Shown: positions 11,079 through 17,658, numbered from the stretch's first letter. The stretch is DNA of 64,000 nucleotides from Hyphochytrium catenoides (GCA_900088475.1 FLMG01001070.1:62001-126000); one strand, 5' to 3'. Numbers and translations: made by a program. Notes: a model not told the origin generated them from the letters alone.

Positions 11079-12132
11079 GGTTGCTTTCAAGTTAGAAGTC
11101 CAGTGCTCTAACACACAGGAACAAGTCTCCTCCCAGGACGTTTAGGAACTAATGTGTATCAACGTTTAACGCAGACCAGTCTTCATGAAAACTCAATAAC
11201 AGGAGGCATACCTATTGGCGAACATTTTAATAATAGGCCCGCCAGCGGCGAGACTTAGAACCTCTCTCAAGCAGTAATAATATCGTTGCCACCCAACCAT
11301 CATCGCCACCACTGGTTGCGAAGAGATCACCTCATATCAAATAGTCATGATAATCATAGTGCATGCTACTTCTTCATAGATCTTTCTGATTTGGCTATGA
11401 CCATATCTGGAATAACAGGTGGTTCTATCTGTAGAAATGTGTTATTTTACCCTAACTATACTTGATAACCTAGGGGTGCCAACTAGTAAAAGGTAGACGC
11501 CTATTAAATTATACAAGACTTACCCTCTTCTAAGCTTTCTACTAATTAATATGCTAGCCTAGCAGCCAAAGGACGGTTTTGCACGGTAGTCTGTGTTCGA
11601 AACGAAGCTTCTTCCAACTCCCAGGAGGAGGTCTGAGCCTCGATCTCTCAGACGGGAAGGTCAATGCAAAATGAAAGGTCAAGCAAGGCGGCGGGCGATG
11701 CAGTGCCGTCAGCTTCAACCTGGCCCACGGTAGCGCTGAGGATGCTGCTCCTTCGCCCAGACGGCACGTGCAGAGAGAGGCGTGCAATGAGACTATGAGA
11801 CGGAAGAGTTACGGCGCTTGCCATCGGAGATAGGGCCCATCGACAGAAAGTCCCCCAGATCTGTCTTGCTGTCTCTGATATTTAAGCGCTGACTGAGACC
11901 ATTTGGCATTGTATGTTAAGGCCGAGTACAGAATAGGTGCTCATTCTTTCGAGAACGCAGCCACGCGCTGGGAGTGAGCCTGTATGTCATTCTAATACGC
12001 CATGAGCCCAGCTTGTGGACATTGAGTCTGTAGGCTCAATCAACCTTGCCTGCAGTATAGCCGTTAATACGTCCCGATCGTATCGCCCTGGAGGACTCGA
12101 CGTACCCAGAAGCTGAACACTTCGGGGCAGAA

Positions 12133-15100
12133 ATGGCGAACAAAAGGAAGACACTGGAAAAAGTGAGGGAAAGGGCTAGAGCACAGGTTGCCCATGGCGC
12201 TGGACATTTAGAAGGAGAGGACGAGGGACTAGGTTCATCGTTTCTGCCCGCCTCTCTGCCCTCTCCCAGCTCGTCCCTCTACCGAGACCCGATTTACCTT
12301 CGTAAAGCTGCCGGACGACTTCTTCTTTTTGCGCTGGGCCTTGCGTTTAGCCTCACACTGCCCCTTGCCTTTATGAAAGTCTACACTTCTCTGGTGGACT
12401 TCACCCCTCGGCCATCCTCTTCCAGAACATCGCCGAGTGGTAGCTTGGAAATGTTATCTGGTCCAGTAAAGCAAGATGATAAGGCTTTCTTGCGCTGGTT
12501 CAGTTCTATTGGCGGAGAGAGTCCAAAGGTCACCTTAGGTCATTTTCCAGGAGAAGGAAGAGGGTTGATGGCTACCAATGCTATCACTGAAAAGGTGAGG
12601 TAGGGCCGGGAAGTTCGACCAACTACCCAGCAGCTTGCGGGGAAGAACCGCGTTGAGAGAGCAAGGGCAGAGCAAAAGACAGCTAGGTGGAAAGAGGTGG
12701 AGGGATAGAAAGAGTGACCAGCATAGGGCACATACAGGAACGAAGCGGAGAGAATGTGATAAGAAGGAAGCGCCGTAGATTGTGTTCATGACTCTGATCT
12801 TTGCGACCTCCTAATTTTTCTAACGTTGTGGCGACCATTAGGACCTCCTAATATCTGTCCCCATGGACTGGGTTATCTGTCGGGAGACTATAGTGAAGAC
12901 GGCATCCCCTACGGACCGAGCGATCTATGAAGCTGTGCGCGAGGATGAGGATGCTCTCTCACTCTTTCTTATTAAGCAACTTGCTCTGGGAAGTCAATCT
13001 CCATGGTGGCCATATCTTAAGGTGCGCACCCTCGGCTATCCGTGCTCAATCTCGACGTTTATCAGGCAGTTATGTTGTCGCTAAATACTTGCCAGTGTCT
13101 CCATAGATCTACTCATCTCTCACTCCGTCACATTTGTTGCTTCTTACGTATCAACTGTAGGTTCTCCCTTCGGCGGTCCCGGTGCCCCTTTCCTTTGAGG
13201 CTTGGGAATTGCAAGCCATTCAAGAGGAGGGTGAAATTGATTGGGCGAGACAGGAGAGACAAAGGCTTGAAGAGTCATTTCAGTCTTTGGAGAGCAAGCT
13301 AAGAGTCCTGTTGAACGATATAACTCAAACAACCACGAAGGAAGCCAAAGTCCTGCACAAGGATAAGCTGGAGTCCTCGTCTGAGTTTGGCTCCCTAGCT
13401 CTATTTTTCTGGGCTAAAGCGGTCCTTAGCTCCCGGGCTCTTACTATACGAGGGGACCAGTTCCTTGTTCCCTTTGCAGACATGGTAAACTATAAACCTG
13501 ATCCCCAGAAGAGGACCTCGAGCAACGGGGAACGTTTCCTGGCTTATCATAAGGTACATCGACAAGGTACGCCAGTTCAATCTGCTTTCTCCGCTAAGAT
13601 GCCTCAATTTCTTATCTTCATTTCTGCTACGTCCTCCTTATTATTAGAGTTTCGAGTATACGCAGACCGCAACACGGCTCTGGGTGAACAGCATTATGAA
13701 GACTATGGAGACAACGACAACTACATTTACTTCAGACACCACGGCTTCATAGCGCAGAATAATCCCTACGACTGCGTTACTATCCCTCTGCCTCTGCTTA
13801 CGGAGGAAGGTCAGCAGCATCGCCATCTTACATCTGTTGCACATGCTTTGCTTATTGAAGATGCTCTTGTGCCTAGTGAAGATACAACCTGACTCTCTAA
13901 CCTGACTGTCTATCTTACCATCCGCTCTGCTTTATATTAGATCCATCTAGCGAGAGAAAGAGGGCGCTAATGGAGAGAATGCGTCTGATGTCTCCGCCCT
14001 ATCCATGCGTCAATCCCAACAACGAGCAGCCGGTTCATGGCGCCATAAGTGAGGACGCCAAGAGAGTTAGCAAACTTCTCTCTCCTGCTTCTCTGCTATA
14101 TCTCAAAGTATTCTTTATGGACGAGGAAGTGCTGAGCAGATGCGGAGGCAGCCCTTCTCCCGAAAACTGTGAGAGGCCTGGGAAGCAAGAGCAAGAGATC
14201 CTGGACTGGTTAGCGAAAGCTGTAGAGCATCGCCTGCGAGAATTTCCGACCACCTTCCAGCAAGACGAGGAGCTCCTCAAAAGGGTCAGTCTAAACCATT
14301 TAATGTGACTGATCTCGGACTCTTGCAGTGCCAATTTTCTTTTCCCTTTTTTATTAGATAACCACGCTGGCCACGCTTTAACGTTTCATTTCTCTATGGC
14401 GGATTTCCTTTGTTATGTCTACCTGGCGCTCTGTGTTCAGTGGCAAGAGTCAAAGAGCACACAGGTCAGCGATGGTATGAAGGTAGCCGTTCAGTTCAGA
14501 GCGACAAGAAAGAAGCTTCTAGGCGAAGTTCTTGTCAAAGCGGCCTGGGAAAACGCCTCGTTGCTGGAAGAGCTGATGGGAGTCGCAAGACTAGGTGAAG
14601 AGGAGCAGGAGAGAGAAGTTGACACAGAGGAGTCTGGCTTGCTTATGCCTACAGACCAAGAAGAGACGTCTAAATCATCGACAACAGAGGAGCTCCATGC
14701 GTCGCTGGAACTTTTCAATCGCTGGGTAGCGGAGCAGAAATTTCCAAAGAACAAGCTGAGAGTAACCGCTTTCCAAGGAATGAGACTTGGTATGAATACT
14801 ACTAGCCGTCCACGCATTAGGGTTGATCGCAATGTTGCCTACATAGAATAGCACTGCGCACGAGATTATGTTTCCTGAAGTTTCCTCTTCCTGTTCCTCT
14901 TACCTGTCTGCGTACGTCTTCGGCAGACCTTCATTCTTTTCAGAATGGCGCTAGTCCGTAACGTGTCCCTGGACTCAGGGATCAACTGTTAACGCCATGC
15001 CTCAATTACCCATTTGCGAGCCTCTCAGCCTCTTACGCTAAGACCCTTCGCTGCATCGTAGGAACCCAAGCAATGGAGGCTATCAAGCAAGGAGAACTGT

Positions 15101-17318
15101 ACCTTTCGGTGCCTCTTTCTGCTATAATGGATAGCACGTCTGCTCATCGCTGTTCTACGCTTGGGCCCGTCTTCGCGGAGATCTCTACCATGTTTGGCCG
15201 AAGGGACCCACACCAGGAGCTGCTGCTTCATCTCATCTATGAGATGTTCGTCAAAGGTGGGCAAAGGAAGAGAGAGATGGAATAGTTCGCTTAAAAGCAT
15301 TGTTAAGAAGAGTCTTGAGCCTGAAATGGACGTGAAAGGCTCGGCTGACAGGTCTCTCGGCTAGGGAGGGACTGAATAGATATGAATTTCTGCGATCTTA
15401 GGCTTCCTGCTGTGAACTTTTGCAGGGAAGAGCTCTCATTGGTATCCGTACCTTGCTCTCTTACCCAAGTACTCGGATCTGCAAGTCCCACTTCTCTTCT
15501 CAAAGGAGGAGCAGGAGCTACTGGTTGGCTCCTCTGTCTATCAGGATTTGACCTTTTACCGAGAAAAATTGCGATACAGGTCTTGCCGCTCATCCACTTT
15601 CCTCGGTCCGCCATGCCTGCCCTGATCCGGGTCTTCTTTGGCTTATCTTCCTCTCTCTCATTCACTCTCTTTCTCTCTCTCCCCCTGTGGCTCTGCTTTC
15701 TAACAACGGCTTCCTCGCGCAGATACAACTCGTTATGGGGCAACGTACTCTCTCTCTTTCCAAAAGTCTTTTCGAAGGAAGTCTTCACCCTAGAGAACTA
15801 CCTGTATGCAAACATTATACTCGACAGCAGGAGCATCTGGTGGGACGGAGACCGGCATCTGGTGCCTGTGCTGGACATGATCAACTGCATGGAAGGACCA
15901 GATCCTTCACAGGTTCACAGGACGGACTTGGACCCGTACGTGCTGCTTCTTGGGGAACACCCAGCTTAAGCCAGCGGGGTTGGAAGGGCGAGAGCTGGGA
16001 ATGAGGAAGATATGCGGGAAAAGGTGGACCAAAAGAAGTCAAACGTAATGCAGAAAGGGAAACAATGGGAAGACAACGAAAGGAGACAATCTCCCGTGAA
16101 ACCGCTCAAGGAAAAGAGCCCAAGTCTGACTGGTAGAGGGTAAAGATCAGCGCACCATGAGGAGAAAGGATGCTACTGAGAGGGACGCGACGCGCTGGCA
16201 CAGAGCAGCGAAACGCATAGTTAGAATAGCAAAAAAACAACACATCTCAGAACTAACCGTCCCATTCTTGCCTGCCTGATTAGGGCTCGTCAGAACGCGG
16301 AGACGAAGGCTGCGTGGGACTTCTCTGAAGGGGAGCAAGTCTTTGAAAACTACGGCCAGCCCAACCATATCTACTTCCTCTACCACGGCTTCACCTTAGA
16401 AGATAACTCCCATGACTGTTTGCAGCTCTTGGTGAGCCTGACAGACGAAGAGGCTGCCAGACACAAACCAGAGGTGAGGGCAGCCCTCGTGCTCACAACC
16501 TCGCTCCTTCGTGTACTTCTCTCTTATTCAGTCCAGCCTTGCTCCCTTGATCGTTCTCCCTCTACTCCTCAATACACCATTATGCCTTGCAACTATGTCT
16601 CTACAAGTGCCTCATCTAGGTGGGCACCGCTGCTTAGCTTTGGATGATGTCCCCACATATTCTCCTGCTTCGTAAGTCCCGCTAATCGAGTCGTTTTGTA
16701 TGCAGAGTCTAAGGTTAGCTCTTCGGCATCTGGGCTTCTATTCGTTGCAAAACACCTTCTGCTTATCTCCGGAGAGCATTCCGGAGAAGTTGTTAGACTT
16801 CCTATTCCTGAAGTATGACCCTGAGAGAGTCGAAAGAAATCGAAGGGAGAGATCACGGCTTTCCTATGAGAAGCTACTAGAAGTGCTTGAGGAGACTCGT
16901 GCCAACTATCGCGTGCCTCTTGGCGAAGCAATTGAGAGGCTTGCGCAGCCAAGGTACCGTAGATACATCTGAAGAAGAGGACCAAATATGAAGAGAAGTT
17001 CCCATTTACACTTATAGATGGCCATCTCTGTCTTCGCAGCTCGCCGCTGACTGTCTTCTTTCCGAATTTCTTTCCTGTCTGTTGCTGTCGTCGGACTCCT
17101 CTCGGTCCAACCATTACGAGTCCCTTCTGTCCTATCTCACCATCCGCTGTCCGGCTAACGTCTTTGTTGACTTACTACACAGGAACCTGTCGGGCAGGGA
17201 GCTGACCATACTGAAGTTCATCGTCCAAGAACAGCGACTCCTGGAGGCGTTAATCGAGCGCTTGGAGACAAAACTGGGAAGAACAGAGATAAAAAGACAG
17301 GAGAAGACAGAACTCTAA
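12133..17318 (+). CDS. Protein with N-terminal TM helix and two tandem SET + Rubisco-LSMT substrate-binding modules, C-terminus KTEL
   Basis: TM LLLFALGLAFSLTLPLAFM. SET1: GEGRGLMAT, SPWWPYLK, WAKAVLSSRAL, LVPFADMVNY, GEQHYEDYGDNDN, RHHGF. SET2: GMRLG, GELYLSVP, SHWYPYL, ILDSRSIW, LVPVLDMINC, GEQVFENYGQPNHIYFLYHGF. Ends EIKRQEKTEL*. Confidence 0.8.
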
Positions 17319-17658
17319 CGCCACCTCATGAGCCAGCGGCTGGTCATAGCCTTAAGGGCTACCTTTTATTGCATCACTCTGTTCCCACTTGACCAGAGAA
17401 GTGGGATGCAAGGACAATGTAGCAGGCACTGTCAGCGTGGGCTATACAAATGAAAAGAACGGACCCTGTTAGAAGCAATTATCAGTACATGGCTTCGAAG
17501 GCCAAGGCTCCAACGGGCAGGTAATATAACGTCATTTTGACAGCTTAGGTTCTTGGAGATACTGCCCTAAGGGGTAATGCCGGCCCACTAGAGTGACGAG
17601 CTTCATCCAAAAAGACACGAACTCTTGGTACGACCATCCATTTAAGGTCCTCCTCACT

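What the first reader, a model, noticed from the sequence alone, without database searches (positions are those of the whole stretch)
12133..17318. Double SET-domain protein with a type II membrane anchor and C-terminal KTEL: a possible ER-lumenal protein methyltransferase
Seen: a single hydrophobic helix preceded by basic residues (YLRKAAGR-LLLFALGLAFSLTLPLAF), two complete SET + LSMT substrate-binding modules in one continuous spliced frame, and the terminus EKTEL*. Established: Rubisco-LSMT/SETD3/SETD6-type enzymes normally have one module and act in cytosol, nucleus or plastid; KDEL-like termini act only in the ER lumen. Inference: the positive-inside rule and KTEL independently put both SET domains in the ER lumen (or chloroplast ER in an alga). 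That would imply lumenal Lys/His methylation or a non-catalytic chaperone role, which I do not recall being characterised.
Basis: partly seen in the sequence, partly recalled or inferred. Interest (0 to 1): 0.7.

Follow-up and report, generated by a model that had tools for sequence, protein, structure and literature searches.

The report
Membrane-anchored tandem SET methyltransferase, ER lumen
This is one 12-exon gene for a protein with two SETD3/LSMT-type methyltransferase units behind a single membrane anchor. Comparison with over 100 uncharacterised protist relatives suggests the whole family works inside the ER or secretory pathway, where no SET-domain enzyme was found described in the library searched.

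Summary
A 12-exon, all GT-AG model (12133-17318, +) gives one 1012-aa frame. It has a single strong hydrophobic helix (aa 63-81), two SET plus LSMT-type units, and the end EKTEL*.

It is one gene. Full-length 800-1000-aa relatives align colinearly across both units, and exon 6 encodes the end of unit 1 and the start of unit 2.

The ER-lumen idea gains independent support from the family:
- 46 of 52 long relatives with a readable N-terminus have a hydrophobic signal peptide or anchor before unit 1.
- 29 of 150 relatives end in ..EL (HDEL, KDEL, RDEL, KEEL and others) against about 1 expected.
- Signal-peptide forms carry xxEL; anchored forms have basic N-terminal tails.
- The family has near-invariant cysteines that SETD3 lacks at the two positions compared.

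In this genome BiP ends HDEL, calreticulin, GRP94 and GRP170 end KEEL, and a PDI ends HEEL. A KDEL receptor is present. KTEL is therefore a near-match, and it is a known weak retrieval signal in human AGR2.

Both units keep the catalytic Tyr and SAM-site residues, with Lys-type rather than His-type pocket residues.

No light-harvesting genes were found, which argues against an alga and so against the chloroplast-ER option.

No RNA runs were listed, and localisation and activity are untested.

The parts
12133..17318 (+). Whole coding region: 12 exons, 1012 codons plus TAA
   Evidence: All 11 introns are GT-AG and the joined frame has no internal stop. Full-length relatives align colinearly and match nothing in the window outside 12000-17400.
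12133..12594 (+). Exon 1: basic N-terminal tail, membrane anchor, Ser/Pro-rich stalk and start of SET unit 1 (FLRWF..GG at 12487-12516; GxG motif at 12550-12573)
   Evidence: The end of the exon aligns to relatives P0002, P0003 and P0009.
12319..12375 (+). Hydrophobic helix, aa 63-81: predicted type II signal anchor
   Evidence: Kyte-Doolittle mean 2.24, the only such peak. Flank charges are +3 on the N side and +1 on the C side. Relatives have an anchor or signal peptide at the same place.
12842..13021 (+). Exon 2: N-terminal part of SET unit 1
13161..13566 (+). Exon 3: insert region and SET core of unit 1 (SR motif at 13428-13454; ADMVNY, i.e. the NH motif read as NY, at 13473-13493)
13648..13809 (+). 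Exon 4: C-terminal SET part of unit 1 (catalytic-Tyr motif YEDYGD at 13695-13712; HHGF; conserved Cys in PYDC at 13764-13775)
13941..14284 (+). Exon 5: LSMT-type substrate-binding lobe of unit 1, with three near-invariant Cys (14000-14011, 14135-14149, 14162-14176)
   Evidence: Pfam PF09273 at 1.2e-9. The Cys columns are conserved in 69 of 70 relatives.
14441..14789 (+). Exon 6: end of the unit 1 lobe, an acidic linker and the start of SET unit 2 (LFNRW at 14711-14737)
   Evidence: This one exon bridges both units.
15062..15256 (+). Exon 7: N-terminal part of SET unit 2
15426..15579 (+). Exon 8: insert region of unit 2
15723..15935 (+). Exon 9: SET core of unit 2 (DSRSIWW at 15823-15843; LDMINC, i.e. 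the NH motif read as NC, at 15871-15888)
16284..16473 (+). Exon 10: C-terminal SET part of unit 2 (FENYGQ at 16342-16359; YHGF; Cys in SHDC at 16408-16419)
   Evidence: Matches SETD3 at 0.0014.
16706..16953 (+). Exon 11: substrate-binding lobe of unit 2, with the conserved Cys in TFCLS (16754-16768)
   Evidence: Aligns to Aphanomyces P0003 residues 766-790 at 6e-5. The Cys column is conserved in 61 of 70 relatives.
17183..17318 (+). Exon 12: last conserved helix of the family, a 16-residue tail and KTEL (17304-17315), then TAA
   Evidence: Profile match to the C-terminal helix of the family at 2e-4. Tails ending in xxEL are seen in relatives.

Best explanation
This is a single gene for a type II membrane protein. 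A basic tail of about 62 residues faces the cytosol. One signal-anchor helix spans the membrane. A Ser/Pro-rich stalk then carries two complete SETD3/LSMT/SETD6-class methyltransferase units (each a SET domain plus a helical substrate-binding lobe) into the lumen of the ER or early secretory pathway.

The C-terminal KTEL probably acts as a weak KDEL-receptor retrieval signal that adds to retention by the anchor.

Both units most likely bind S-adenosylmethionine and methylate lumenal or secretory proteins, more likely on lysine than on histidine. Each unit has its own conserved signature and so probably its own substrate or step.

Shown here: the gene structure, the family membership, the tandem architecture, and the family-wide signal sequences, xxEL ends and conserved cysteines.

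Inferred: the topology, ER residence, catalytic activity, residue specificity and the SAM supply to the lumen.
For: Gene model and unity. Relatives of 800-1000 aa match the query in four stretches, and exon 6 spans both units.

Family identity:
- Exon 5 matches Pfam Rubis-subs-bind.
- The family profile matches SETD3 at 1.6e-43, LSMT at 2e-31 and SETD6 at 1.9e-25.
- The AlphaFold model of relative P0003 has pLDDT 88 and shows a TM helix plus two units.
- Foldseek places that model on SETD3 at 1.8e-20, TM-score 0.7.

Secretory-pathway location:
- 46 of 52 relatives have an N-terminal hydrophobic segment before unit 1.
- 29 of 150 end in ..EL against about 1 expected.
- Among signal-peptide forms 10 of 23 end in xxEL; among anchored forms 0 of 13 do (Fisher p = 0.006).
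- The N-side flank is more positive than the C-side flank in 13 of 15 anchored proteins, this one included.
- Four Cys in unit 1 are each conserved in 69 of 70 relatives, and three in unit 2 in 59-63 of 70. Two of them align to Arg and Ala in SETD3.
- Single-unit euglenozoan relatives with a signal peptide and an xDEL or xGEL end keep a Cys at the [DE]C position and further Cys downstream.

Own genome:
- An ERD2 receptor gene is present.
- BiP ends HDEL, calreticulin, GRP170 and GRP94 end KEEL, and a PDI ends HEEL.
- An MFS_5 gene is present. This is the family of the Golgi SAM transporters (bioRxiv 10.1101/2021.07.06.451061).
- KTEL is a working but weak retrieval signal in human AGR2 (PMC7519367).

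Catalysis:
- The Tyr of the [DN]YG motif, which aligns to the FYG tyrosine of SETD3, is kept in 70 of 70 relatives in unit 1 and 63 of 70 in unit 2, and in both units here.
- The SR motif, the Asn of the NH motif and the HGF motif are also kept.
- The positions equivalent to SETD3 N255 and W273 are Leu/Ala in unit 1 and Ile/Leu in unit 2. That resembles the Lys-type pocket (alignment to the N255F/W273A entry 6v62 listed).
Against: - There is no transcript evidence, because no RNA run was listed.
- The N-terminal tail of 62 residues is unusually long, so an alternative first exon cannot be excluded.
- KTEL departs at position -3 from the [KH][DE]EL used by all five ER residents read in this genome.
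- None of the 13 anchored relatives ends in xxEL, and the closest named relatives lack such an end.
- The type II topology with a short tail is also the standard form of Golgi enzymes.
- The His of the SET 'NH' motif is replaced by Tyr in unit 1 and Cys in unit 2.
- Signal peptides were judged by hydropathy only. No dedicated predictor was available.
- No lumenal substrate is known.
Confidence: 0.6

Rival explanations
1. The topology is the same (units in the lumen), but the protein lives in the Golgi or a later compartment, or is shed and secreted, rather than in the ER. On this view KTEL is a chance ending or a weak, leaky signal.
For: - A short cytosolic tail, a signal anchor, a stalk and a lumenal catalytic domain make up the classic Golgi-enzyme layout.
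- 0 of 13 anchored relatives carry xxEL.
- KTEL does not match the [KH][DE]EL of this genome's ER residents.
- KTEL is leaky in AGR2.
- The known lumenal SAM importers are Golgi proteins.
Against: - Signal-peptide relatives are strongly enriched for HDEL, KDEL, RDEL and KEEL ends, which marks the family's home as the ER.
- This protein carries a 16-residue tail after the last helix that ends in xxEL, as those relatives do.
Confidence: 0.2
2. It is a lumenal pseudo-enzyme: one or both SET units no longer transfer methyl groups and serve as a binding or chaperone module for lumenal clients.
For: - The His of the NH motif is replaced in both units, by Tyr and by Cys.
- Tandem duplicates often keep one dead copy.
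- The plastid relative pTAC14/PAP7 was solved as a subunit of the plastid-encoded RNA polymerase (titles listed).
- SAM supply to the ER lumen is unproven.
Against: - Active-site-type residues are near-invariant in both units across 70 diverged relatives: the SR motif, the Asn, Tyr-Gly, and HGF.
- Nine relatives still have the canonical His in unit 1.
- An MFS_5 gene exists in the genome.
Confidence: 0.15
3. It is a gene-model artefact. Either two neighbouring single-unit genes were read as one, or the hydrophobic segment is not translated, so the product would be an ordinary cytosolic SETD3/SETD6-like enzyme.
For: There is no RNA evidence. An acceptor-like site lies inside exon 1, near 12272.
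Against: - Exon 6 encodes the end of unit 1 and the start of unit 2 in one open frame.
- About 95 relatives of 700 aa or more were found, most matching the query in four stretches.
- There is no Met between residue 1 and residue 81, and an in-frame stop lies upstream.
- An anchor or signal peptide is present in 46 of 52 relatives.
Confidence: 0.05

Closest known systems
SETD3 (actin histidine N-methyltransferase; e.g. PDB 6mbj, 6ict, 3smt)
   Same: SETD3 is the best sequence and fold match. It shares the split SET domain followed by the LSMT-type helical lobe (family profile 1.6e-43; Foldseek 1.8e-20). The motif Tyr-Gly and the following GF..N.HD stretch are shared.
   Different: - SETD3 has one unit, not two.
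- SETD3 is recalled to be cytosolic and to lack a signal sequence and xxEL end (not checked here).
- The positions of SETD3 N255 and W273 are hydrophobic or small here.
- The NH motif reads NY and NC here.
- SETD3 has Arg and Ala at the two conserved-Cys positions that were compared.
Rubisco large-subunit methyltransferase, LSMT (PDB 1mlv, 2h21), and SETD6 (3qxy)
   Same: They have the same domain pair and the same class of non-histone protein lysine methyltransferases. Unit 1 has Ala where SETD3 has W273, as in the LSMT motif ADLINH.
   Different: They are recalled to be plastid-stroma or cytosolic/nuclear enzymes with a single unit and a canonical NH motif.
Uncharacterised tandem-SET proteins of oomycetes and other protists (e.g. 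Aphanomyces invadans XP_008874630.1, Pythium oligandrum TMW65373.1, Hondaea fermentalgiana GBG29350.1, Rhodelphis marinus EP00736_P007322)
   Same: These are true relatives with the same two-unit order, the same conserved motifs and cysteines, and an N-terminal anchor or signal peptide. Identity is 43-50% over exons 3-4.
   Different: All are annotated only as hypothetical, 'SET domain-containing' or 'setd3'. The anchored ones lack xxEL and the signal-peptide ones often have it. This protein combines an anchor with KTEL.
Lumenal methyltransferases of the secretory pathway outside the SET fold (plant Golgi pectin/xylan methyltransferases fed by GoSAMT transporters; METTL9)
   Same: They provide a precedent for SAM-dependent methylation in the lumen of the secretory pathway and for a SAM importer of the MFS_5 family. 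An MFS_5 gene is present in this genome.
   Different: They have a different fold (from memory), they act on polysaccharides or have a different location, and none is a SET-domain protein.

Membership tests
LSMT/SETD3/SETD6 class of SET-domain protein methyltransferases | Rubisco-LSMT-type substrate-binding lobe (Pfam PF09273) after the SET domain | tested here: met
   Unit 1: exon 5 scores 39.3 bits at 1.2e-9, above the cut-off of 21.6. Unit 2: seen only through relatives (P0068 residues 826-878) and the family profile.
LSMT/SETD3/SETD6 class of SET-domain protein methyltransferases | Split SET fold colinear with solved members | tested here: met
   The family profile matches SETD3 at 1.6e-43 over residues 81-495. 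The model of relative P0003 matches SETD3, LSMT and SETD6. The window's exons align colinearly with these relatives. The window's own joined protein was not folded.
LSMT/SETD3/SETD6 class of SET-domain protein methyltransferases | Active-site tyrosine of the C-terminal SET motif, and the SR and Asn residues of the SAM site | tested here: met
   Both units have them: YEDYGD and FENYGQ, SSRAL and DSRSI, and the Asn of ADMVN and LDMIN.
LSMT/SETD3/SETD6 class of SET-domain protein methyltransferases | Canonical Asn-His ('NH') motif | tested here: not met
   It reads NY in unit 1 and NC in unit 2. This is the norm for the family: Tyr in 51 of 70 and His in 9 of 70 for unit 1, and Cys in 59 of 70 for unit 2.
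LSMT/SETD3/SETD6 class of SET-domain protein methyltransferases | SAM-dependent methyl transfer to a protein substrate | not testable with these tools
   Needs a biochemical assay.
SETD3-type histidine methyltransferases | Asn and Trp at the positions of SETD3 N255 and W273 | tested here: not met
   In the alignment (entry 6v62, which is N255F/W273A by its title), the equivalents are Leu/Ala in unit 1 and Ile/Leu in unit 2. That these two residues set His versus Lys preference is recalled from the SETD3 literature and was not re-read here.
ER-resident proteins retrieved by the KDEL receptor | Entry into the secretory pathway through an N-terminal signal peptide or signal anchor | tested here: met
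   Hydropathy peak of 2.24 at aa 63-81 with a more positive N-side flank. The feature is conserved in 46 of 52 relatives. No dedicated predictor was available.
ER-resident proteins retrieved by the KDEL receptor | C-terminal tetrapeptide of the type used in this organism | tested here: inconclusive
   BiP ends HDEL, calreticulin, GRP170 and GRP94 end KEEL, and a PDI ends HEEL. KTEL differs at position -3. It is a functional but weak signal in human AGR2.
ER-resident proteins retrieved by the KDEL receptor | KDEL receptor encoded in the genome | tested here: met
   PF00810 matches at C3328, 1.8e-24 and 5.3e-22.
ER-resident proteins retrieved by the KDEL receptor | ER localisation of the protein | not testable with these tools
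   Needs imaging, fractionation or protease protection.

The most novel reading that the evidence does not exclude
An ancient lumenal protein-lysine methylation system of the eukaryotic secretory pathway. Its enzyme would be a SET-domain methyltransferase, tandem in stramenopiles and Rhodelphis and single-unit in euglenozoans. It would be stabilised by disulfides, held in the ER by xxEL or a signal anchor, and supplied with SAM by an MFS_5-type importer. It would methylate lumenal chaperones or secretory cargo. No named animal, fungal or land-plant member was seen among the few relatives whose taxa were looked up, which might explain why it went unstudied.
Probability: 0.35. Interest if true: 0.8.

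Novelty: new variant of a known kind. Interest (0 to 1): 0.66.

Why it matters
In the literature searched here, SET-domain methyltransferases are described in the nucleus, cytosol and plastid. None was found described in the ER lumen.

A conserved, disulfide-bearing, tandem SET enzyme behind a signal sequence would imply two things:
- Protein methylation is part of protein maturation or quality control in the secretory pathway of a large part of eukaryotic diversity, including oomycete pathogens, labyrinthulomycetes, ochrophyte algae, Rhodelphis and euglenozoans.
- SAM must reach that lumen.

The idea is directly testable in tractable stramenopiles. It would also give a function to more than 100 sequence clusters now labelled 'hypothetical' or, misleadingly, 'setd3 / histone-lysine methyltransferase'.

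Tried and rejected
- RNA support: the look-up of sequencing runs listed no run. Read laying was therefore not used and splicing is unconfirmed by reads.
- Pfam exon by exon: only exon 5 matched. The split SET domain is invisible in single exons (one search failed on a frame slip and was corrected).
- PDB search with exons 3-4 read through intron 3: only weak LSMT and SETD3 hits, E about 0.1-0.7.
- ESM Atlas by features on exon 3: unnamed protist clusters only, a lead and no more.
- Word search with the family alignment: only saprolegnian oomycetes were returned, so it added little on range.
- BLASTP of exon 12 against the tail of one relative: no match. The profile comparison did match.
- Literature: six searches for SET or LSMT-type enzymes with signal peptide, KDEL, HDEL or ER lumen, in oomycetes or diatoms, or with tandem SET domains found no description of this family. 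Two papers opened from these searches were unrelated. The library is partial, so this is not proof of absence.
- Chloroplast-ER idea: rejected, because no LHC (PF00504) match was found in the 61-Mb assembly. The assembly is fragmented.
- Two-gene idea: rejected.
- His-methyltransferase label: not supported.
- Earlier notes of this scan: nothing on this gene.
- Joined model: the 1012-aa spliced protein has no reference, so it was not sent to any search or fold tool. All searches used single exons by reference. The structure was predicted for relative P0003 instead. No tree including the window's protein was built. The exons were joined only inside local scripts, to check the frame and hydropathy.


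Full report
**Gene model**

Reading the three forward frames of 12100-17400 and placing the splice sites gives 12 exons:

| Exon | Coordinates |
|---|---|
| 1 | 12133-12594 |
| 2 | 12842-13021 |
| 3 | 13161-13566 |
| 4 | 13648-13809 |
| 5 | 13941-14284 |
| 6 | 14441-14789 |
| 7 | 15062-15256 |
| 8 | 15426-15579 |
| 9 | 15723-15935 |
| 10 | 16284-16473 |
| 11 | 16706-16953 |
| 12 | 17183-17318 |

All 11 introns are GT-AG and 81-348 nt long. The joined frame is 1012 codons with no internal stop and ends in KTEL followed by TAA. An in-frame stop lies at 12058. The ATG at 12133 sits in a good context, and there is no other Met before residue 81. The only strong hydrophobic segment is aa 63-81, with a Kyte-Doolittle mean of 2.24.

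**One gene, not two**

A search of exons 3-4 against 1.84 billion representative proteins returned 413 relatives, 198 of them at E ≤ 1e-10. The 243-aa query was read through the in-frame 81-nt intron 3 into the start of intron 4. Most top hits are 750-1000 aa long and match the query in four stretches, two per unit.

tblastn of four such proteins onto the window places their residues in order on exons 1, 2, 3-4, 6, 7, 8, 9 and 10. The junctions are contiguous, and nine such proteins matched nothing in the window outside 12000-17400.

Exon 6 alone encodes the last helices of the first substrate-binding lobe and the first strand region of the second SET domain. Exons 11 and 12 match the family's C-terminal region.

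Only one copy of this gene was found in the 61-Mb assembly. Two other loci carry an LSMT-type lobe.

**Family identity**

- Exon 5 is a Pfam Rubis-subs-bind domain (1.2e-9).
- Exon 10 matches SETD3 around its active-site tyrosine.
- The two units are paralogous.
- A 60-sequence family alignment (A1) matches SETD3 at 1.6e-43, LSMT at 2e-31 and SETD6 at 1.9e-25.
- Pfam finds SET and Rubis-subs-bind at both unit positions in different relatives.
- AlphaFold2 on the Aphanomyces relative P0003 gives mean pLDDT 88.1. The model has an N-terminal helix at residues 15-40, two SET-plus-lobe units and a disordered linker.
- Foldseek puts that model on SETD3 (1.8e-20, TM-score about 0.7), then LSMT, SETD6 and pTAC14.

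**Compartment**

This is the main result.

Among long relatives with a recognisable start of unit 1 and at least 24 residues before it, 46 of 52 have a hydrophobic peak upstream. Two forms exist:
- Cleavable-type signal peptides, with the hydrophobic core within the first 20 residues.
- Type II anchors, with a Lys/Arg-rich tail of about 15-55 residues followed by a helix of about 19 residues.

Of the 150 best relatives, 29 end in ..EL, including HDEL, KDEL, RDEL, NDEL, DDEL and KEEL. About one is expected by chance, and no other terminal dipeptide occurs more than three times (p about 1e-30).

The xxEL ends sit on variable tails after the last conserved helix, as in the window's protein. They occur in 10 of 23 signal-peptide forms and in 0 of 13 anchored forms (Fisher p = 0.006). 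This is what one expects if soluble forms need retrieval and anchored forms do not.

In 13 of 15 anchored proteins, this one included, the N-side flank is more positive than the C-side flank.

The family also has near-invariant cysteines. Four lie in unit 1, each conserved in 69 of 70 relatives. Three lie in unit 2, conserved in 59-63 of 70. In SETD3 the two that were compared align to Arg and Ala. In the model, the DC/PCV pair and the HDC/FC pair lie at or in neighbouring strands at equivalent places in the two units.

Single-unit relatives in Euglena, Neometanema and Namystynia also have an xDEL or xGEL end. Those whose N-terminus looks complete have a signal peptide, and they keep a Cys at the [DE]C position with further Cys downstream.

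**This genome's own ER signals**

| ER resident | C-terminal signal |
|---|---|
| BiP | HDEL |
| Calreticulin | KEEL |
| GRP170-like | KEEL |
| GRP94 | KEEL |
| PDI-like | HEEL |

A KDEL-receptor gene is present. KTEL therefore differs from local usage only at position -3. In human AGR2, KTEL is a functional retrieval signal of lower affinity (PMC7519367).

Relative to the Aphanomyces protein, the window's protein carries a 10-residue extension ending in KTEL.

No LHC gene was found, so the organism is not photosynthetic and 'chloroplast ER' does not apply.

An MFS_5 gene is present. MFS_5 is the family of the plant GoSAMT and nematode SAMT1 Golgi SAM transporters. This is a lead for SAM supply and nothing more.

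**Catalysis**

Across 70 tandem relatives, both units keep:
- the SR motif,
- the L.P..D..N stretch,
- the [DN]YG tyrosine (70 of 70 in unit 1, 63 of 70 in unit 2),
- the HGF motif.

The window's protein has all of them in both units. The His of the 'NH' motif is Tyr in unit 1 and Cys in unit 2. Both are family norms, and nine relatives keep His in unit 1.

The positions equivalent to SETD3 N255 and W273 are Leu/Ala in unit 1 and Ile/Leu in unit 2. From my recollection of the SETD3 literature, this is the lysine-type pocket. The existence of the N255F/W273A entry with a Lys peptide is shown by its PDB title.

I therefore favour two active lysine methyltransferase units with different targets. 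This is inference.

**Range and prior knowledge**

Named members come from:
- oomycetes: Aphanomyces, Saprolegnia, Achlya, Thraustotheca, Pythium;
- the labyrinthulomycete Hondaea;
- Cantina;
- ochrophytes: Epipyxis, Chrysoparadoxa, Tribonema, Phaeomonas;
- Rhodelphis.

All are labelled hypothetical, 'SET domain-containing', 'setd3' or 'protein-histidine N-methyltransferase'. Six literature searches found no description of a tandem or ER-lumenal LSMT-class SET protein. The library is partial.

The closest named relatives share 43-50% identity over exons 3-4, and their lineages suggest a heterotrophic stramenopile-like organism. I did not establish its identity.

**Open points**

- There is no transcript evidence.
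- ER versus Golgi residence of the anchored form is unresolved.
- Activity, substrates, disulfides and SAM import are all untested.

The joined 1012-aa model has no reference and was sent to no search or fold tool. All searches were made exon by exon, by reference. The fold was predicted for relative P0003. No tree including the window's protein was built. Exons were joined only in local scripts, for frame and hydropathy checks.

Noticed in passing
window 13567-13647: Intron 3 is 81 nt long, a multiple of three, and has no in-frame stop. If retained it would insert 27 residues into SET unit 1 without breaking the frame. The ORF lister shows this as one 243-aa open frame at 13161-13889.
   Followed up: partly
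window 12233-12272: A pyrimidine-rich stretch ending in CAG inside exon 1 looks like a splice acceptor. An alternative first exon joining here would shorten the long N-terminal tail. There are no RNA data to test it.
   Followed up: no
G000:C3097:8605-9561 (L002/L004); C3024 (L013/L018); C4018 (L016); C1704 (L027); C292 (L032): ER residents of this genome end as follows: intronless calreticulin KEEL, BiP HDEL, GRP170-like KEEL, GRP94 KEEL and PDI-like HEEL. The local retrieval code is therefore [KH][DE]EL.
   Followed up: yes
G000:C2211:5609-7196 (L024/L025): A multi-exon MFS_5 family gene. This is the family of the plant GoSAMT and nematode SAMT1 Golgi SAM transporters, so it is a candidate supplier of SAM to the secretory lumen.
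   Followed up: partly
whole assembly G000: No match to the light-harvesting-protein family PF00504 in 61 Mb, which suggests a non-photosynthetic organism. A KDEL receptor (ERD2) gene lies at C3328, with a second weaker match at C3459.
   Followed up: partly
P0125, P0129, P0131, P0134, P0083 (relatives, not in the window): Single-unit relatives of 455-594 aa end in xDEL or xGEL, and most have a signal peptide. Those with a named source come from Euglena, Neometanema and Namystynia. The ER-type SET enzyme is therefore not limited to the tandem form or to stramenopiles.
   Followed up: partly
P0001 (Thraustotheca clavata OQR95723.1): This closest named relative carries an EF-1-beta-like N-terminal piece (Pfam PF00736) before the hydrophobic segment and a Gly-rich tail. 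It is probably a fused or mis-called public gene model.
   Followed up: no
G000:C4646:44626-44958 and C2046:7244-7375: Two further loci carry a Rubisco-LSMT-type substrate-binding domain. They are presumably ordinary single-unit LSMT/SETD6-class genes of this genome.
   Followed up: no
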